64,000 nt of DNA from Podarcis muralis (taxonomy: Eukaryota), in assembly GCF_964188315.1 (NCBI RefSeq), contig NC_135666.1:18228001-18292000 (forward strand), read 5' to 3'. The translations under genes and the position numbers were made by a program. The notes beneath the pieces are model-generated. The model worked only from the letters and a program-made list of their open reading frames with translations, had not been told where the DNA came from and did not search any database. Position 1 is the stretch's first letter. Every line of letters starts with the position of its first letter. Shown piece by piece: positions 2,471 through 53,511 of the stretch.

Positions 2471-4587
2471 CCCCTGCCAGCTATCCACCTGCATAACTGT
2501 TATATATTGATATGAATATAAATTAGTCATGTTACGAAGAGAAGAAAATACTGCTTTTCTTTTTAGACCCCGCTCTCTGAGGCATCCCTCACTACCCCCA
2601 AGTCAGAGAGACAAGGAAATCCCTTATGCAGAAAGCGCACAGCTGTTCTAACATTCTGACATATTTTTTTCATCTATTTTGTGATTTGTACACTGCACAT
2701 ATTCTGAACACAATGCTTTTGATAATTACAAAACACCAACTGGAAAATAATTCCTTTGGCGGTGGCGGAGAGGGAAGCTTTCATCCCTATTCAACAGCAT
2801 GCGCTCTGAACAAGGGACAAATTAGTAGTATGCATACTGGCACATTTATGGCATTTGATAGTCCTTGGAAGCCAGCTGCTCTTCATCCATCAATAAAAGC
2901 AGACCCATGACAAATTTCATGTGACCAGTTGTAGGAAACATCATGGGATTTCTGCCATGAAGGCTATCTAGTTCTGCGGCTAGAACAAGCACTTTGCTTT
3001 TAGTTCCACATCACAACCACTTTGTTTCAACTGCACTATAAGGTCCCTTCCCCACTGCAATAGATAGAAGTCCTCAAGCTGAAGAGCACAGTCCGATAAA
3101 ACTTTTCAGTGGTCAAAAATTGAACCCACACAACTCACTGCTGCCCTCCCTCCTCTTCGCTGCCATTCTTCAACTCTTGCATCTTTACTTGCTCTTCAAC
3201 AAAACTTTTCATTTTCCCTCTACAGTCGTACCTCCCCCAACCAATCCTGTAGTCCTTGCAAGCTCCCACACATGGGCACCAGGGACTACTTTTTAAAAAT
3301 TCCTGTAACTATTCATTTTCTGCAAGTGCCCATGAGCGGCACTTTGAATGGCTCCCACGCACTCACTTCAGATGCATAATTTTGTCGGCGATTGGAACAC
3401 AGTTATAACACAGTTGATATCCTCATTAAATCCAGAAACAAAAACAGGGTCATTTTTTCTAGTATGGGACGTGCCTTTAAAGTCAGCATCTACCCAACTG
3501 AAGTAAGAACTCAAGGGGCGTTGTGAATCATCAGCCAACCGGTGCTGAGGAACATACCCCTTCAAATTTCACGCCAAAGTATTTAAAAATAATTATCGTC
3601 AGAATGCCTGTATTCTAGACTGTAAGTGCAACTCCAACAGATACACCAGGGAGCCTCCCGAAAACATTAAAAATATATCCTAATTCAGTGCCAAGAGATT
3701 TCAAATAGTAATGCACCCATAATGACATGCACAAGTAGCTCTATATGTATATTATTTACTGTGCATAACTAATTCTGCTTCTAAGACGCTGAGCTTTAAA
3801 ATAAAGAACTTGGAATTATCTGACTGTAAAAGTTGTGGACAAGAAGAGGGAATAATGAATAAAGTGAAGGAGGACAGAAACTGAGGATTCATGAGAAGTA
3901 GGGGCTAAATTTTGACACTCCCCATAACCAGACACCCCCAAAACAGCCGTGCCCCAAGGAGAGTTCTCAAATGCAGGCAGCTAAGTTGATCTATTATTAT
4001 ACACATGCAGACACAGCAGCACTTTATGCATGCCTGCAATCCTATGCATTTTCCCTGAGAGTAAGCTCCACTGAACATAATGATACTACTTATTTTTGAT
4101 TTGCATAGGTTCAGCTTGAAAACTCACTGAACTTTAATGAAGCATCTTCTGACAGCTGGGTACTTATCGCTTACTTACAAATGTAAGCAGTCCTGCAAAG
4201 AAATGTTGCCCTTTAAAGTACTAGGCCCATCAATTAACCTTGCTAAAGGAAAGTGGGGGAAATAAATAGCTTGCTTAATTGTTTTCTTCTTTCTCCAACT
4301 TCCTGAATGCTAATCTATCACAAACAAACTAGAAAGTCTCTGTTATAACATTATTCATTTGTCAGAGCCAGGGTGGTCTGTAAATTACCCCAACACAGAT
4401 GAAATTGTCACTCCTATTGTGGGAAAAAAACCCTGGTGCTGCACTTTGCTATCTTCCCCTCCACAACACCACTAGACAGTCGTTTTGAGAGGAAACAAGG
4501 AGAAAGACAGCCAGGCGAAGCGCCTAATGACTGCAAGACCCCCCCCCCCCATCCGATATTTTAAAGAAAGATAACATATTCATGATT

Positions 4588-4728
4588 CCAGTTACAGATA
4601 GGTAGCCGTGTTGGTCTGCCATAGTCAAATCAAAAAAAATTCCTTCCAGTAGCACCTTAAAGACCAACTAAGTTAGTTCTTGGTATGAGCTTTCGTGTGC
4701 ATGCACACTTCTTCAGATACACACAGAT
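4588..4728 (-). mobile_element. Short non-autonomous Penelope-like element (pLTR-derived) carrying a hammerhead ribozyme
   Basis: Perfect 12-bp direct repeat atattcatgatt at 4576-4587 and 4729-4740. Layout gtagccgtgttggtctg...agcaccttaaagaccaac...agctttcg...cttcttcagatac matches the reptile Penelope-like terminal repeat as I recall it. Related pieces at 42401, 45088 and 52633. Confidence 0.8.
4683..4720 (-). ncRNA. Minimal type I hammerhead ribozyme motif
   Basis: Minus strand reads GUAU-CUGAAGA-A-GUGUG(CAUG)CACAC-GAAA-GC-UC-AUAC: stem I GUAU/AUAC, core CUGANGA, stem II 5 bp, GAAA, minimal palindromic stem III (AGCU). Predicted cleavage after UC, between 4687 and 4686. Confidence 0.8.
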
Positions 4729-5984
4729 ATATTCATGATTGTAGTTCTATTTACTGAGCATAGAATTCTCAATATACTTAAGTTCCCAATGAAAAAAAAG
4801 GAATCCCTTAATGTACACAACTCTTTATCCAGCATTTCAGTACTAAACACTGAATGAATGTTCAGAATGAAGGAAATAGAATTAAGTTCTTCAATTTTTT
4901 GTTTATTCGTTTTTCCTTTGTTATGTTTTTTAAAGCTGGAGGCGAAGAAGGTAGACATCCATACAGAGAATGAAACAGAGGACAACCCTCCCATTTTAAA
5001 AAAATCAGTCACATATACGAATAGATCTTCGATTGCCCTACACTTATTTCAGTTCTGCCATGGGTCCATTTTTAGTGCAAGTTCTTCCTGTGGGACAGCT
5101 GTAGCATTTGAAGACCCACAACTATAAGCATGAGGCCAGTGATATGGGTGAGCTACAGAATCAGCAACTTCAATTCCAACAGGATACCAATTTCCTGTCA
5201 CATACCCACCCCACCAGCCTGTGGTTGTGGGTCTTGGAAAAATTGCAGCTGCACCACGGGAAAATCTGCTTCAAAGCAGTTCCTGTGACAGAGCTGTAGT
5301 GTGCAAAAGGAATCCACACCAGGAGGGTGCTAGTACCATGAGACTGATAAAATCAGTCAGTCCAACCCATGTGTTTTGGGGGCTTTAACTGGGATTGATG
5401 GGAGTTGTAGTCTCGACACCTGGAGGGCACCAGGTTAGCAAAGGCTGGGCTACAACACAACACCACACAACATATGCTACCTTAACTACGGGTGGGTGGG
5501 TGGGTGTGGAATCCTTCAATTAAGCACATTAAAGCAGTCATAATCAATAGAGGAACTGAATTCTGAAACCCAATATGCAGCACTCACTTTTTGATAAGAG
5601 GAAATACAGGACCAGTGGCTATCTTACTGAACCATGCCCCAGTAAACTACTTCATGTTTTGCTATCAACTCTGCAATGAGGAAGGAAAAACAGTCTTCCT
5701 GTTACTGACGAAAGCAAGTTTTCCAGGGGTAAAAAGGACAACAAACAAAAGGGGAAAGTTTTCTGAGAGCAAAAGCAGCAGAACAGAGATTAACTCCACA
5801 AGCATGATAACTGGAGAGTGTGGGGGAAAAGCTATTGCTTTTCGCAAACTTTTCCTGTATCACAGAATAGCATTCCATGCATACCTTGCACGCTCAGTGT
5901 TTCCAGCCCAACAAGAGTTCAGTGCGCTTATGCTCAGAGATTTCAGTGGGCTTTTGTTCCAAATTCTGTGATGGGTGGTGATTA

Positions 5985-6170
5985 ATACCAACTGCTTCTA
6001 CAATGGGCATAACTAGAAAGCAGCAAGTACATGTGCAGAGGGCGGCAGCAACAGAACGGGCCTTTTCTGTGGTGGCTCCCTGTTTGTGGAATGCTCTCCT
6101 CAGAGAGGCTTGCCTGGCGCCTTCATTACATATCATAGGCCCCTGTCAAAAGCATTCCTCTTCACCCAGG
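5985..6170 (+). mobile_element. L2-type LINE 3' ORF2 fragment
   Basis: Encodes ERAFSVVAPCLWNAL, the same C-terminal motif as the copy at 38416-38864. Confidence 0.7.
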
Positions 6171-29786: not shown

Positions 29787-29940
29787 CGTCGATGTTCTCC
29801 CTGTCGCTGATGTGCTGCAGGTTGCATCCCGTGTCCTCCCGGCTCAGCTCGGTGTCGGGGCGGTAGGACTCCAGCCGGGAATGGGCATTCCTCCGCAGCT
29901 TGGGGCTGGACGACACGCAGCATGAGGTCGTGTTCCCCAT
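29787..29940 (-). CDS. CCNY: Cyclin Y, coding exon 1 (154 nt)
   Basis: [51 protein letters not shown] matches the vertebrate CCNY N-terminus as I recall it, and differs from CCNYL1 (MGNTLTCC). Kozak context gcggagATGG, donor G|GTAAGG at 29786, Gly2 myristoylation and Cys7/Cys8 palmitoylation motif, and CREM-CCNY gene order as in other amniotes. Confidence 0.97.
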
Positions 29941-30247
29941 CTCCGCCGCCCGTGGAAAGAGGAGGAAGGAAGGAAGGAAAAAGAAGGGAAGGAAGGGTGA
30001 TGGTGGAGGAGGAGGAGGAGGGAGGCAGCAGTCACCAGCGACGTCGAGAAGCCATCAGCGTGCTGGGAAACGGCAAGCGCCGCTGCGGGGCAAGACGACG
30101 GTGGCGGCGGCAGCAAGCGAGGCTCCCGCCGGCCGCGTTCCCCGGCGGCTGCTGGGGTGCCCCGAGGCTCATGCAAGCCGCCTTGCCCCGCCGCGCGGCT
30201 CAGTCCTCGTGCCCAGGCAGGCGCTGCTGCAAAGCCGGGCTATGCCT

Positions 30248-30271
30248 CTGCTGCTGCTGCTGCTGCTGCTG
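30248..30271. repeat. (CTG)8 tract in the CCNY CpG island
   Basis: Direct reading. Shorter CAG/CTG runs near 30330, 30360, 30530 and 30588. Confidence 0.9.
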
Positions 30272-31483
30272 CAGAGCCGCAGCCCCATTGCCCTCCGCCG
30301 CTCCGCCGCCTCTTCTTCCTCTTCCCAGCAGCAGCGGCAGGAGGGGCGGGCTGGCGGCAGCAGCAGCAACACCGCAGCCTTTTCTCCCCCAGAAGCGGCA
30401 GCAGAAGCAGCAGCAGCGAACCCCGAGGCTGCCTTTTGCAAAAAGGGGAAAAAAGAAGCGGGGGGAAGCAAAGGGGGAAAACGGTTCCGGTTCAAGTGGG
30501 TGGGAACGCCGGGCTCGCTCGCTCTCGCTGCTGCTGCTGCTGCCAGACAAACAGGGCAGGCAGGAGGCAGGCGTCTGTTTCTTTAAGCAGCAGCAGCGCC
30601 TCTTCTGCTCGCTCCTCCCGTCGGGGGAAGCCCGGCCCGGCCGCAGCCGAGCGGGAGAGGGAGGGGATCCCAGCCGCGGGCGGAGGGAAAAGCCCCCTGC
30701 ACGGCAAGGAGCGAGAGAGCCGGCCGCGGCCAGAGACAGCACCGCCTTCCTCTTTTCTGCCGGCTGCCCTGGAAGGAATCGGGCCGGAGGCTCCTCCGCG
30801 GCCGGGATCCTCCTCTGCGTGGCTCCGCTGTGGGAGGTCTTCTGCTCTGCTTTCGCTTTCCTCCCCCCTCCCTGAGCTTCGTTTTGGAAGTGACAAGCTG
30901 AGGGGCTGGGATAACCCGCGCCCCTTCTGGTTTAGGGGTTAGGAGGGCCCGAGCCGAAAGACGCTGCTAAGGGAACAAGGTCTTGTGTTCGGGTCTCGGC
31001 ACCACCAGTGCCCCAAATGAATGTAAAGGCTGGCTTCCAGCGGGGGCGGGGGGGGGGGCGTTATTGGATACCTGAAAGTTTCCGGGCAGGGGAGCATCAA
31101 CACAAATCTGCAAATGCGCATTTATAGGATGCGGACTTGGCATGGCACGGAAGGCAAAGCCAATCCCTGTAAATACATTATTTAGTTTGAACCCCACCCT
31201 AGATCACCCCAAATCAGCTTCTCTTCAATTCATTTTACCCCCATTAATTTCTCTCTTTTGCAAATCAATTACCGGTACACTATCTCCCCCCAATTCATTA
31301 CCCCTGCAAAGTTAAGTAAATTGATTACCCAAAATTTATATCCTACCCAGTAACCAAGATCGCACGCACACAAATTCAGTTTCTCCCAAATTCATAACCC
31401 ACCCAGATATATTCAAGTGGGCACTCAGAAAGATGGGGGGGGTCATGCCCCATTTGGGTCCATGCCCACCCCAGGTATACCTC

Positions 31484-31491
31484 TGACGTCA
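31484..31491. promoter_or_regulatory. Perfect palindromic CRE (TGACGTCA) ~1.55 kb upstream of the CCNY ATG
   Basis: Exact motif seen; function untested. Confidence 0.4.
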
Positions 31492-31536
31492 AGCAATGGG
31501 GCCTCACCTGGATCACCTAGTCCTAGGAGAAAGCAT

Positions 31537-31888
31537 AAAGGTAAAGGTACCCCTGCCCATACGGGCCAGTCTTGCCAGACTCCAGGGTTGTGCGCCCATC
31601 TCACTCAAGAGGCCGGGGGCCAGCGCTGTCCGCAGACACTTCCGGGTCACGTGGCCAGTGTGACATCGCTGCTCTGGCGAGCCAGAGCCGCACACGGAAA
31701 CGCCGTTTACCTTCCCGCTGGTAAGCGGTCCCTATTTATCTACTTGCACCCGGGGTGCTTTCGAACTGCTAGGTTGGCAGGCGCTGGGACCGAGCAGCGG
31801 GAGCGCACCCCGCCGTGGGGATTCGAACCGCCGACCATGCGATCGGCAAGTCCTAGGCACTGAGGTTTTACCCACAGCGCCACCCGCG
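31537..31888 (-). mobile_element. Sauria SINE, lacking a few 5' bases
   Basis: Reverse complement of the head and (ACCTTT)n tail. Shares the gcatgg variant with the 8982 copy. Confidence 0.93.
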
Positions 31889-32803
31889 CATTCTCAAATA
31901 CAGGGCCATCCCTACCATAAAGCAGATTAAGACGGCTTCCTCAAGAGACAGATGCCAGGCATGTCAAAAGTTCCCTAATTCCCTTAAACTAGCCTGCTCT
32001 GCACATCCTAAGTCATCCCACTGCCTTCAGATACCTTGGAAGATGTTGTTCCACTGCCCATCTTGAAATAACATTCAGTGAGAAGGGGGCGAGATTTGAT
32101 TCAGCTTGTATTAAAGGCAAAGCTACCTAATGTCCACTTTCTGAAATAAAATGCAAACCGAAACATAGCCATGCTTCAAAACTCACTCTTCAGATTACAT
32201 ATACCAGGATAAAGGCTGTATAAGTTTGCATATATAAGTGAATCTAACATACAAAAATGCTTTATAGTAAGGAAAGTTACTTTGCAAAAAAATTGCCTGT
32301 TAGGGAATGAATTTTCAGGAGGACCTTTTTTAAAAAAAAATAAAAATAAAACGGTTGTGAAAATGCAGAAAATTTAAGACTGGAAAAATGAGAAAATGAA
32401 AGAAACGAAAACTGTTAGATTTGTCTGTCTTTAAATTCAGCTGCCACAGTGCAGTTAGATTCTGTATGCGGAGGTGGGGGTGCCATCCTGTCCTTAGCCT
32501 CTGGCACCAAAATGTATTGGGCTGGCCCTCTTCAAAAATGCAGTGCTTTTCTATTTGGATTGCATGTGTCACATCCTACCTTGGGAAGCAGGCTCTGTTG
32601 AGGCCTGGTTCAAATTATGCTTCTTCAGCATATAGCGCACGCATGCATACCCTTTGACCGCACATTATCTGGTTAGCAACCCTTTCAGGAGTTAGGAGAT
32701 CCTGAATCACAGCAATTGTTGGCAGTAATTTTCCTCTTCTTAGTGTGCAGCCAAAGCTTCCTGTGGCTGTTGTAGGATGTGGTTGTTTTGTATTTTTTAA
32801 ATG

Positions 32804-50416: not shown

Positions 50417-52632
50417 GCAAGTAAGAAGACCAAGAATTACTTGCATACTTTCTAAGGCAGGGGTTAGGCACCTTCTTGTTCCAGGGAGACAGATCTTTGT
50501 CTCCATACTGTGGGGCAACCTTGACAGGTCAGTGGTACAACCCACCTGTCAACCATCTAATATCCTAATAACACCTGATGATTGGTGGGTTGTCCCACCT
50601 ACCTGCCAATTTTTTTGTTGAAACTGTTGCTAAAATGGAGCTTTCTCCTTTATTTTAGCAGTGGTTTCAATGCAAACGACTACCAAATGCAAACCAATAT
50701 CTGGAAGGCCAGAGGTTGACGCAGAGCACAATTTAGTCAAAGTTAAGTGTATTTAAGACAAAACACTTTCAGAACTGCAGCTAAGCACATGCTTAAATGC
50801 ATCCCATGAAATCAGCAGAACTTAAAAATGCTTAACTTTAGCTGGAGCATGCCCTGAACAGATTCACCGCGCAACCCTATCTGCATCTGCTCAGAACCAA
50901 GCCCCATTGTTTAATGGGATTTACTCCCAGGTGTATAGGACTGCAACCTCAGTTACTTCTGTGCAAGCTGCAATCATAGAGCCTAGTAATTCCAGCAGTT
51001 CACTTCACATTATTGTGCAGGGGATTCCCTAGTTACCAATTATTCTGGTTCCATCTCCATGGGGAAGAGGTAAAACTTGCTGAGTCACTTCCTATCAGCG
51101 TTATAGGAACACTTGAGCCTAAATGGCTGAATAGCAGGCCAGTGGCTTTCTGATGTTACAAATCTGGCCTTCAGCCATTTCCCTAAAAACCCTTTTTCCT
51201 AATGTATGGAGGTATTACTGCTCTCAGGCCATATTGGTATATAGCACTTCAGAGTTCATTACTCATTATTTCAATTCTGACAACTATCAGCAGTGGATAA
51301 TTTGTTATCACACATTCATGCCAACACTGACCCATACTTACATGGTTAACTGGAAAGAACATCACCACGAACAATTGCATATGCCTAGAAATTCTCATGC
51401 ACACAAAATTATGCACAGATACAATACCCTTCATTTTCTTTATCAGGAAGCATTCAGTGTCAAAATAACGGGAACCATTTTTAAAAGATGATGACACTTA
51501 CCAACATGGTGTTGCTGTTTTGGTCTTTACCTTGAGTCATTTTAACTCTAGTGATCTTCTTGAGATAAATCTGTTGGCAAATGCTAATTTTTGCTAAATG
51601 TTTTTCTATTAGGCTGCAAACTTTGGTTTCATAAATAAATTAACAAAAATGATGATTCATTAGCAGAGGCTAGTTTTAATCACTAAAGTAAATGTTTGTC
51701 AGTGGAGCTGAGAATTAAAGACACAGATTCTTTTTTTAAAGTTAGTTTGGGCCTAGATGTGTTATTGCAACAGGAAATGAAAGAGATGTTATTAAAGATG
51801 GGCATTAAATTGCAAGTTATCATACACTTCCTTCATTGCTTTGAGAAGCCATGTACATAGAGGTTTTTAATATGCAATCTTATTTGATACTTTTAATTGG
51901 GTAGTAGATTGGAGATTATGTGCCAGTAAATGTTTTTCAATGCTAAGGTGAATCATGTGGCATTATAAACATAAAGTCAACTTTTACTTTGATCTCTTAA
52001 ATCAGGGTTGGTTCATTTGTGGTCTTAACCACAACTCCCATCATCCCTTGCTATTGGTCATGCTGACATGCTGGAAGTTGGAGTTCAACAACATTGGGAG
52101 GACTAGAGGTTCTCCTTCCCTGCTACGAACCCGTAAAAATTGACTTGTTTCAATGGCATTTAGATAAAACCATGTTCCGGCCTCTGCCACCAGCAATGGG
52201 AAGACCAGGCTAGCCTTATCCATCAGCCAGAAAAGTAGCAGATACAGAGAGCTTGCTTCCCCAATTCTCTGCTAAAAAGAGCTCTCTACTTCAACTGCTA
52301 CTTGTGAGGGTATACATAACAGAAGGGAATCAGGATGCTCTGACCCCATCAATCAAGAAGAAGATTGGGTTGTGCAAGCTTGGGAGGGAGCCCAGTATTA
52401 ATGCAACCTGTTGCAAACTGCCTTAATAATTATTCAGGGATAAGGCACACCATAAATCTCCAAAATTGTTAATTTTTAGCCTGTGTGGACTTAGGCCAAA
52501 TTAAACCCAAATATCCATTGCAAATTCAGAAATATTATTAAACAAAGAATCCTATTACTGAGGGAGAACAGCGCATACATTTAGGTATAGAAAGAAATTA
52601 AGGAAACAGCATATTCTCACAGCTAAAAAGCA

Positions 52633-52719
52633 ACAAAGTTTGTTCTGGTCTCTAAGGTGCTACTGGACAATTTTTTAATTTCTTTCGACTGCGTCAGACC
52701 AACACGGCTACCTACCTGA
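52633..52719 (+). mobile_element. 87-bp Penelope-like fragment lacking the hammerhead
   Basis: ggtctctaaggtgctactgg...cagaccaacacggctaccta matches the minus strand of 4588-4680. Perfect 12-bp TSD agctaaaaagca (52621-52632, 52720-52731). Confidence 0.82.
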
Positions 52720-53511
52720 AGCTAAAAAGCAGGATGAAACAGAAACTGTCCCTTTAGCAGGATTCTGGAGAACCAAGTGCTTTTCTACTTTTGCCAAAGC
52801 TAAGTGCTTCCAACACACTGTGGTATGTCTATGGAAACAGCAAAATGCAACCAAGTATTTCCAACAAGGAAACATCCTTATATGGAAAAGGGATTATTAT
52901 TTCATTTGGTGCCATGCCCTTTTATGGTGTGTAGCTGATGAGGAGCAGTTATCATGCTCTCTAGCTAAAAGGAATTTTACGGTAATTAATATACCGGAAC
53001 ATAAAGGGTGGGAAAGCAGGCAATTTGGAATTGGATTATGTGCCGGATCCTGTTTCTAATAAATACTTGCATACTTGGTAAGCAGTATGAGATAACTGGG
53101 TCATAGATACAATGGGTGTATCACATTTCAAACTAGCTGCCTTCGCTCCACAACATCCTAGGCTAATGCTTGTTCAACAGAGAACGTGGAAAGTTAGATG
53201 CCCAATTGCCTCCAGGGCAGCAACTGGAATTCCAGTCAAGCAGATTTCTTGTATTTATTTAATACAAGTAAATTTCTTTATCTGCATCACAAAACATATG
53301 CATGCACACGAGAGTAAGAGTGTGCATGTGATGTATGTTTGGGTACAGTTGCCGTTGCTTCTTTTAGTACAATGTCTCTGTTAAATTTGACAACACAGTC
53401 CTGGGATCAAAAGTCTTACCTATTCTCAATATACAGCTACCACTTTCAGAGATTTAAGGAAGTACACCCTGACATTTACATTTTTGACCTCTTAATTCTA
53501 CACCTGTACAC

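What the first reader, a model, noticed from the sequence alone, without database searches (positions are those of the whole stretch)
4576..4740. Intact hammerhead ribozyme in a 141-bp mobile unit, on the CCNY pre-mRNA strand
Seen: the minus strand of 4720-4683 folds as a minimal type I hammerhead with all conserved core bases (CUGAAGA, GAAA, U-C cleavage site), a 4-bp stem I, a perfectly palindromic stem II (GUGUGCAUGCACAC) and a palindromic AGCU in place of stem III. The unit has a perfect 12-bp TSD and no ORF. Known: Penelope-like elements encode minimal hammerheads whose palindromic stem III supports dimeric cleavage, and an extra A after A9 is tolerated in a viroid hammerhead (CChMVd). 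Inference: this belongs to a family of very small non-autonomous ribozyme-bearing retroposons. It is sense to CCNY intron 1, so it could cut nascent RNA if two copies pair, or release a small RNA with a defined 5' end.
Basis: partly seen in the sequence, partly recalled or inferred. Interest (0 to 1): 0.85.

Follow-up and report, generated by a model that had tools for sequence, protein, structure and literature searches.

The report
Truncated Penelope retroelement with minimal hammerhead
The hammerhead ribozyme motif is real, but it sits in one young, not-yet-fixed, 5'-truncated copy of an extremely abundant Penelope-like retroelement, a known kind of ribozyme-bearing repeat, and nothing shows that it cuts the CCNY transcript.

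Summary
The minus strand of 4720-4683 carries a complete minimal type I hammerhead, inside a 141-bp insert (4588-4728) flanked by a perfect 12-bp target-site duplication. It lies sense in CCNY intron 1. A full stem-plus-core descriptor hits once in the window and never in 300 shuffles.

Every unusual trait of the motif is a published hallmark of Penelope-like-element (PLE) minimal hammerheads: the extra base after A9, G10.1-C11.1, 4-bp helix I, and GC palindrome in place of helix III.

Reads from the same species show:
- The unit belongs to a hugely abundant family: 7,655 and 8,781 contigs per DNA run, with summed depth about 10^5 times the flanks.
- Many copies continue upstream into one conserved sequence where this copy stops.
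- A second copy in the window shares the 3' part but starts elsewhere and lacks the ribozyme.
- The insertion is polymorphic; a precise empty site exists in two individuals.
- RNA reads show no ends piling up at the cleavage site and no reads from this locus.

So this is an ordinary 5'-truncated PLE 3' end. The scan has noted such motifs repeatedly in this genome.

The parts
4576..4587 (.). Left copy of the 12-bp target-site duplication ATATTCATGATT
   Evidence: The empty-site joint 4575->4729 has 12 letters that fit both sides (table 5).
4588..4728 (-). Inserted DNA, 141 bp. It is absent, together with one duplication copy (153 bp), from alleles in two other individuals.
   Evidence: X13 record 9 (735 nt) joins 4575 directly to 4729. 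X1 contigs join the same way with a 30-letter overlap.
4588..4722 (-). The part homologous to the abundant family: the 3'-terminal 135 nt of a Penelope-type element. The shared 3' terminus lies at 4588-4591.
   Evidence: Depth on 4588-4722 is 0.3-2.1 million against 9-18 in the flanks. Loose ends before 4586-4591 have random continuations (agreement 0.38-0.59), which marks a true terminus. Loose ends behind 4722 continue into one conserved sequence (agreement 0.87-0.91 in RNA).
4723..4728 (-). Six bases (AUCUGU on the element strand) at the 5' junction that match neither the family nor the target. They are probably junction filler from truncated reverse transcription.
   Evidence: The family consensus behind 4722 is TGAAAC..., while the window has ACAGAT. 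The empty site shows these bases belong to the insert.
4683..4720 (-). Minimal type I hammerhead motif. Helix I is 4720-4717 paired with 4686-4683. The rest is CUGAAGA 4716-4710, unpaired A 4709, helix II 4708-4695, GAAA 4694-4691, GC 4690-4689, U16.1 4688 and C17 4687. The predicted cut lies between 4687 and 4686.
   Evidence: The traits match the PLE min-HHR description in PMC4209133.
4610..4668 (-). 3' region hairpin with 8-bp arms, GUUGGUCU (4668-4661) and AGACCAAC (4617-4610). Six of the pairs are kept in the second copy. It is a candidate recognition structure for the element's reverse transcriptase (inference).
   Evidence: Fold of the whole unit and alignment of the two copies.
4729..4740 (.). 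Right copy of the 12-bp target-site duplication
52633..52719 (+). Second, shorter copy of the same family (87 bp). It has the same 3' region and lacks the hammerhead. Its own perfect 12-bp duplication AGCTAAAAAGCA lies at 52621-52632 and 52720-52731.
   Evidence: blastn 81% identity over 75 bp, E = 4e-14; sequence; alignment.
29787..29940 (-). CCNY exon 1 coding part ([17 protein letters not shown]...ENID). It places the finding about 25 kb into intron 1, in sense orientation.
   Evidence: Six-frame search, CpG-rich 30001-32000, and no exon-2 motif further down.

Best explanation
This is a recent, still polymorphic, 5'-truncated insertion of the 3' end of a Penelope-like retroelement (PLE). 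Earlier scan notes call the genome a lizard's. The inferred mechanism follows published PLE biology. The element's GIY-YIG endonuclease made a staggered cut, giving the 12-bp duplication. Its reverse transcriptase started at the family's usual 3' terminus (4588-4591), copied about 135 nt through the hammerhead, and then stopped. That left six filler bases at the 5' junction. The hammerhead is the family's normal minimal ribozyme. Each such copy carries it because it lies about 100 nt from the 3' end. In this isolated monomer it is a passenger and most likely inactive. Shown here: the motif, the duplication, the empty site, the abundance, the shared 3' end with variable 5' ends, and the absence of a cleavage signature in RNA. 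Inferred: the PLE enzymology and the inactivity at this locus.
For: Motif and duplication. All four emergent traits of PLE min-HHRs named in PMC4209133 are present: a base between 9 and 10.1, G10.1-C11.1, palindromic 15.2-16.2, and a short open helix I. Poseidon_Ac of Anolis has the same architecture with a different sequence: CUGAGGA-U-helix II-GAAA-CG-UC. supplies the read evidence. 7,655 and 8,781 DNA contigs lie on 4588-4722, with summed depth about 10^5 times the flanks. There is a precise empty site (153 bp skipped, 12 letters shared) in two individuals from two studies. Continuations at the 3' end are random, while the continuation beyond 4722 is conserved. Opposite-strand joints typical of PLE inverted copies are seen. 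No place shows many molecules beginning or ending. RNA depth in the flanks is zero. A second copy with a different 5' end and its own 12-bp duplication is shown. The literature reports heavy 5' truncation, pLTRs carrying HHRs and inverted copies as PLE hallmarks (PMC8557442). It also reports internal RT initiation defining the genomic 3' ends, an HHR dispensable for insertion, and no RNA-seq ends at the HHR site (PMC11167929).
Against: No RT or GIY-YIG ORF was seen by me. The window has none (only 10 of the 24 ORFs of at least 120 aa were scanned). I could not fetch a full-length copy. The PLE assignment therefore rests on ribozyme architecture, insertion style and unchecked scan notes. The 30-nt upstream consensus is open in two frames, so it does not prove an ORF end. 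Contig depth is not a true copy number. Contig and read alignments necessarily stop at this copy's own 5' edge, so the distribution of 5' ends across the family was not measured.
Confidence: 0.88

Rival explanations
1. This is a dedicated, very short non-autonomous retroposon: a retrozyme-like monomer derived from a PLE pLTR, about 135-141 nt, that is mobilised in trans as a unit.
For: Non-LTR retrozymes derived from PLE pLTRs exist in reptiles, with a mean consensus of 176 bp and dispersed monomers (bioRxiv 10.64898/2026.07.22.740005). DNA depth stays at 87% of its maximum through 4684-4707, so most alignable copies include the ribozyme. About 60 contigs per run leave the reference at 4720 with heterogeneous continuations.
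Against: Many copies continue beyond 4722 into one conserved sequence. The second window copy has a different 5' end. There is no tandem array or second unit here. No go-back (circular) joint is among the listed joints. The break at 4720/4722 is forced by the reference copy's own edge, so it says nothing about other copies' ends.
Confidence: 0.07
2. The ribozyme is active at this locus. It cleaves CCNY intron-1 RNA or releases a small RNA with a defined 5' end, giving the insertion allele a regulatory effect.
For: The motif is in sense orientation in the intron. The core is intact, including the CpG at C11.1/G12 that has decayed in about 10% of family depth. Conserved intronic hammerheads exist in amniotes (general knowledge; cited in PMC4209133).
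Against: The insertion is polymorphic and recent, not conserved. It is the only such motif in 64 kb, so no partner lies nearby for the dimer. No read-end pile-up is seen at family level at a depth of about 700-830. Minimal HHRs cleave poorly even as dimers (PMC4209133). The Anolis PLE HHR needs the element's protein (PMC11167929). Family RNA carries an A-to-I editing signature, which suggests long duplexes rather than ribozyme folds.
Confidence: 0.03
3. The match to the hammerhead consensus is a chance match in unrelated DNA.
For: Rfam models do not detect it. The fold energy is not unusual.
Against: 0 of 300 shuffles give any descriptor hit. The motif lies in a family with thousands of copies in which no core position listed varies in 10% or more of depth, apart from CpG decay at G12 and C17U.
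Confidence: 0.01

Closest known systems
Minimal hammerhead ribozymes (min-HHRs) of metazoan Penelope-like elements (Cervera & de la Pena 2014, PMC4209133)
   Same: It has the CUGANGA and GAAA boxes, an unpaired base between A9 and G10.1, G10.1-C11.1 and a 4-bp open helix I. Helix III is absent and replaced by a palindromic 15.2/16.2 (GC). It occurs mostly as single motifs in truncated copies spread through the genome. The paper reports these motifs in reptiles (turtle, snakes).
   Different: Helix II is 5 bp plus a tetraloop here, against 6-8 bp in the Schistosoma and Drosophila examples. This particular sequence family was not found in the texts I could read.
Poseidon_Ac (PAc) of Anolis carolinensis, the PLE studied in vitro (Frangieh et al. 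2024, PMC11167929)
   Same: It is a squamate PLE with a min-HHR of the same architecture. Its genomic 3' ends lie a fixed distance downstream of the HHR, set by internal RT initiation. Its HHR overlaps the ORF start, and here the loop-II AUG is in frame for 9 codons. Position 4675 removes the stop in 38-55% of family depth. In both cases no RNA-seq ends are seen at the cut site.
   Different: The sequences are unrelated outside the core. In PAc the cut site is 26 nt after the start codon, here 16 nt after the loop AUG. No ORF of the present family was seen by me.
Non-LTR retrozymes of animals (Cervera & de la Pena 2020, PMC7229834; Li et al. 2026 preprint)
   Same: They are short, non-coding, hammerhead-bearing repeats related to PLE pLTRs. 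Dispersed monomers exist, and reptile consensus lengths are about 176 bp.
   Different: Retrozymes are defined by tandem units with canonical type I HHRs and by circular RNAs. Here there is a single unit, a minimal HHR and no circular joint.
CChMVd plus-strand hammerhead with an extra A between A9 and G10.1 (De la Pena & Flores 2001, as cited in PMC4209133)
   Same: An extra unpaired base at the same core position is tolerated.
   Different: That one is a viroid ribozyme with full helices I-III and loop-loop contacts. It has no relation by descent.

Membership tests
PLE minimal hammerhead (min-HHR) | Conserved core: C3U4G5A6N7G8A9, G12A13A14, A15.1-U16.1, H17 | tested here: met
   CUGAAGA 4716-4710, GAAA 4694-4691, U 4688, C 4687.
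PLE minimal hammerhead (min-HHR) | Unpaired nucleotide between 9 and 10.1, and a G10.1-C11.1 pair | tested here: met
   A 4709; G 4708 pairs with C 4695. The feature is listed in PMC4209133.
PLE minimal hammerhead (min-HHR) | No helix III; palindromic 15.2-16.2 that allows a dimeric helix III | tested here: met
   AGCU at 4691-4688. However, ViennaRNA cofold pairs the helix II palindromes in trans rather than AGCU.
PLE minimal hammerhead (min-HHR) | Short (4-5 bp) open helix I | tested here: met
   GUAU paired with AUAC, 4 bp; the next pair, U-C, fails.
PLE minimal hammerhead (min-HHR) | Self-cleavage at H17 | not testable with these tools
   This needs a bench assay. Indirectly, no read-end pile-up is seen at 4687/4686 at a family depth of about 700-830 (table 6).
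Penelope-like element insertion | Shared 3' terminus with variable 5' truncation | tested here: met
   Two window copies have the same 3' region and different 5' ends. Flanks at 4586-4591 are random, while the continuation beyond 4722 is conserved.
Penelope-like element insertion | Target-site duplication; insertion by an endonuclease | tested here: met
   Perfect 12-bp duplications flank both copies. The empty site is confirmed in reads.
Penelope-like element insertion | Autonomous relatives encode a telomerase-like RT plus a GIY-YIG endonuclease next to the same HHR/pLTR | tested here: inconclusive
   No Pfam hit in 10 of the 24 window ORFs of at least 120 aa. Collection scans found no copies. 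Only unchecked scan notes report such ORFs in this genome.
Penelope-like element insertion | Partial tandem (pLTR) or inverted arrangements | tested here: inconclusive
   Not present at this locus. Opposite-strand joints within the unit occur in other copies in DNA and RNA (table 5).
Canonical type I hammerhead (Rfam Hammerhead_1 and relatives) | Scores against the Rfam covariance models | tested here: not met
   No hammerhead family at the gathering score, nor at E<=10 on 4500-4800.
Non-LTR retrozyme | Tandem units, each with an HHR, and circular RNA | tested here: not met
   No tandem repeat in 3500-6000. One descriptor hit in 64 kb. No go-back joint is listed (five joints were not shown).
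SINE | Pol III head derived from tRNA, 5S or 7SL | tested here: not met
   ARAGORN finds nothing in 4300-5000. Rfam finds nothing.

The most novel reading that the evidence does not exclude
The 135-141-nt form is a distinct, currently mobile mini-element. It would consist of the hammerhead plus the RT-recognition tail, trans-mobilised by an active PLE, and its ribozyme would be switched on only when the PLE protein binds. Intronic sense copies such as this CCNY allele could then be cut in cells that express the element.
Probability: 0.05. Interest if true: 0.45.

Novelty: new member of a known kind. Interest (0 to 1): 0.12.

Why it matters
It matters little for ribozyme biology. Minimal hammerheads in Penelope-like elements, including those of reptiles, have been known since 2014, and this copy is one of a very large number. 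Two modest points remain. First, the insertion is polymorphic, so the family is or was very recently mobile in this species. That makes it a usable marker and a natural test case, comparing carriers with non-carriers, for whether an intronic sense min-HHR has any effect. Second, family transcripts of both orientations carry an A-to-I editing signature. These fragments may therefore be a source of double-stranded RNA in this animal.

Tried and rejected
- Rfam at the gathering score and at E<=10 gave no hammerhead, only a chance snoR126 hit at E = 7.
- The monomer fold is not more stable than shuffles.
- Exact scans of viral and metagenome contigs for the 29-nt ribozyme found nothing.
- The conserved 18-mer CAGACYAACACGGCTACC hit 22 microbial or viral contigs. 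Similarity never extended beyond 18-24 nt, so these are chance matches.
- A full-text search for two 11-mers of the unit returned only unrelated primer sequences.
- Pfam on ten window ORFs found no family, and so no RT or GIY-YIG.
- The Poseidon_Ac consensus shares architecture but not sequence with this unit.
- I considered using the break at 4720/4722 as evidence for a defined 5' end. I rejected it because every alignment must stop at the reference copy's own edge.
- I considered reading the upstream consensus as the ORF end. Two frames are open: one stops at the UGA of the CUGA box, the other runs through the ribozyme to TAA at 4675-4673. It is therefore only compatible with that reading.
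Full report
**Observation**

The sequence is as described. On the minus strand the motif reads as follows:

| Element | Bases | Coordinates |
|---|---|---|
| Helix I, 5' strand | GUAU | 4720-4717 |
| Core box | CUGAAGA | 4716-4710 |
| Unpaired base | A | 4709 |
| Helix II with loop | GUGUG-CAUG-CACAC | 4708-4695 |
| Core box | GAAA | 4694-4691 |
| Positions 15.2/16.2 | GC | 4690-4689 |
| U16.1 | U | 4688 |
| C17 | C | 4687 |
| Helix I, 3' strand | AUAC | 4686-4683 |

- The 14-mer of helix II is palindromic only because a 5-bp stem closes a self-complementary tetraloop.
- ATATTCATGATT stands at 4576-4587 and 4729-4740, around 141 bp.
- I wrote a descriptor requiring both core boxes, an optional extra base, helix II of at least 4 bp, a palindromic 15.2/16.2, U-H and helix I of at least 4 bp. 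It finds exactly this site on both strands of the window and nothing in 300 first-order Markov shuffles.
- The simpler pattern CTGANGA-N(8-30)-GAAAGCT gives 1 hit against 0.07 expected.
- Core boxes alone are not above chance by much, with 10 hits against 5.0 expected. None of the other nine has the stems.
- Rfam does not see the motif at the gathering score or at E<=10.
- The monomer fold is unremarkable, at -10.3 kcal/mol and z = -0.12. Both results are expected for a hammerhead without helix III.

**Host gene**

A six-frame search finds [51 protein letters not shown] on the minus strand from 29940, next to a CpG-rich stretch at 30001-32000. No exon-2-type motif lies on that strand between 29787 and the start of the window.

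**What the unit is**

A second copy lies in the window on the plus strand at 52633-52719.
- It is 81% identical over the 3' part (E = 4e-14).
- It has its own perfect 12-bp duplication, AGCTAAAAAGCA, at 52621-52632 and 52720-52731.
- It ends with the same ...CAGACCAACACGGCTACCTA.CTG... sequence.
- It begins downstream of the ribozyme and lacks it altogether.

I laid two stranded RNA runs (raw reads) and two DNA runs (contigs) of the same species on 4300-5000 at 85% likeness. This gave five results.

1. *Abundance.* The flanks have contig depth 9-18. Positions 4588-4722 carry 7,655 and 8,781 contigs, with summed depth of 0.3-2.1 million. The tool warns that this is not a copy number, but the family is plainly very abundant.
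2. *A precise empty site.*
   - A joint from 4575 to 4729 skips 153 bp (141 + 12), with 12 letters fitting both sides.
   - In run X13, one 735-nt contig spans both flanks without the unit.
   - In X1, the two flank contigs overlap by 30 letters across the empty junction.
   - The insertion is therefore real, its duplication is exactly 12 bp, and it is not fixed in the species.
3. *Shared 3' end, conserved upstream continuation.*
   - At the element's 3' end (4586-4591), other copies go on with unrelated letters (agreement 0.38-0.59). This is the family's true terminus.
   - Beyond 4722, many copies go on with one sequence (agreement 0.87-0.91 in RNA, 0.48-0.59 in DNA).
   - This copy has six unrelated bases there (4723-4728).
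   - Longer relatives exist, and this copy is cut short at its 5' side.
4. *Passive transcription and no sign of cleavage.*
   - RNA depth is zero in both flanks.
   - About 1,400 reads per run lie on the unit alone, and 97% of them run on into unlike sequence, so they come from other copies.
   - Both orientations are about equally deep in a library that is clearly stranded (see point 5). This speaks for passive transcription inside host transcripts.
   - No position qualifies as a place where many molecules begin or end, at a depth of about 700-830 over 4684-4707. Cleavage of a fifth or more of family transcripts at 4687/4686 is not seen.
5. *An A-to-I editing signature.*
   - T>C changes appear only in first-mate-on-plus reads (4657, 4658, 4669, 4684; 16-48%).
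   - A>G changes appear only in first-mate-on-minus reads (4670, 4671, 4685; 7-19%).
   - The same changes make up about 0.1% of DNA depth.
   - This is the pattern of A-to-I editing of duplexes formed by sense and antisense copies.

**Comparison with what is known**

*Cervera and de la Pena 2014* (PMC4209133) defined minimal hammerheads in the flanking repeats of Penelope-like elements.
[quoted passage not shown] All are met here.
- They note that most motifs occur singly in truncated copies.
- They found such motifs in turtle and snakes.
- They report that single motifs do not cleave in vitro and that dimers cleave weakly.

*Craig et al. 2021* (PMC8557442) list heavy 5' truncation, partial tandems (pLTRs), adjacent inverted copies and HHRs inside pLTRs as PLE hallmarks. 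The opposite-strand joints fit the inverted copies.

*Frangieh et al. 2024* (PMC11167929) studied Poseidon of Anolis carolinensis.
- Reverse transcription starts at internal sites that define the genomic 3' ends.
- The hammerhead overlaps the ORF start.
- It cleaves only when the element's protein is added.
- Ribozyme mutants still insert.
- RNA-seq shows no ends at the cut site.

The published Poseidon_Ac consensus has the same ribozyme architecture (CUGAGGA, U, helix II, GAAA, CG, UC) but no sequence similarity to this unit, so this is a different family.

*A 2026 preprint* (10.64898/2026.07.22.740005) derives animal non-LTR retrozymes, including short reptile ones, from PLE pLTRs. This unit lacks that category's defining tandem units.

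**Mechanism**

- *Shown:* the staggered 12-bp target duplication, the fixed 3' end, the variable 5' end and the recent insertion.
- *Inferred from PLE biology:* GIY-YIG cleavage of the target; target-primed reverse transcription starting at the family's 3' terminus (4588-4591) and copying about 135 nt through the hammerhead; then premature termination with six filler bases.

The ribozyme lies about 100 nt from the 3' end. Any copy longer than that carries it, which explains why intact-looking hammerheads are scattered through the genome. The CpG at C11.1/G12 (4695/4694) is still intact here but has changed to give G12A in about 10% of family depth. This fits a young copy.

As a lone monomer with a 4-bp AGCU as the only possible helix III, and with no partner in 64 kb, it is most likely inactive. 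ViennaRNA cofold of two copies pairs the helix II palindromes in trans rather than AGCU. That neither supports nor excludes the dimer model.

**Limits**

- I did not see an RT or GIY-YIG ORF of this family. Ten of the 24 window ORFs of at least 120 aa have no Pfam hit.
- Scans of viral and metagenome contigs gave nothing usable.
- The PLE label rests on ribozyme architecture, insertion style and the literature.
- Earlier notes of this scan describe Penelope ORFs ending or starting in the same kind of hammerhead in this genome, and call the genome a lizard's. I could not check either point.
- The 30-nt upstream consensus is open in two frames. One stops at the UGA inside CUGA. The other runs through the ribozyme, includes the loop-II AUG and stops at TAA 4675-4673. 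That stop is AAA in 38-55% of family depth.
- The RNA libraries are ordinary RNA-seq, only about 12% of each run was read, and 5'-OH ends were not specifically captured.

**Verdict**

The element is an ordinary, young, 5'-truncated PLE fragment with the family's known minimal hammerhead. No function in CCNY is indicated. The scan has flagged the same kind of motif many times on other DNA of this genome.

Noticed in passing
window 4657-4685 (family level): Strand-specific RNA-DNA differences on the Penelope-type fragment. T>C appears only in first-mate-on-plus reads (4657, 4658, 4669, 4684; 16-48%). A>G appears only in first-mate-on-minus reads (4670, 4671, 4685; 7-19%). Both are about 0.1% of depth in DNA runs. 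This is the pattern of A-to-I editing of sense/antisense duplexes formed by copies of this repeat. The DNA and RNA come from different individuals.
   Followed up: partly
window 52621-52731: Second copy of the same retroelement family (87 bp, plus strand), without the hammerhead and with its own perfect 12-bp target-site duplication. Both copies in the window have 12-bp duplications.
   Followed up: yes
window 4673-4702, minus strand: The AUG in the hammerhead's loop II (4702-4700) opens a 9-codon frame closed by TAA at 4675-4673. Position 4675 differs in 38-55% of family DNA depth, which turns the stop into AAA. Master copies may start their ORF inside the ribozyme, as published for Poseidon_Ac.
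   Followed up: partly
window 4620-4724 (family level): Several opposite-strand joints within the unit occur in DNA contigs and RNA reads of other copies. These are head-to-head or fold-back arrangements of the kind described for PLEs (table 5).
   Followed up: no
window 4539-4552: The poly-C run next to the insertion differs in length by 2-3 bases between sequenced individuals, with small substitutions nearby (tables 3 and 4).
   Followed up: no
window 29787-32000: CCNY exon 1 (minus strand, ATG at 29940) with a CpG-rich promoter region at 30001-32000.
   Followed up: partly
window 4627-4633 (family level): Many family copies diverge from this one in the 3'-terminal ~45 nt, around the A-run at 4632-4639. 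Loose ends before 4627 and 4633 and indels at 4631-4632 indicate subfamilies with different tails. One continuation (TAAGTGATGTGCTG...) is over-represented in RNA.
   Followed up: no
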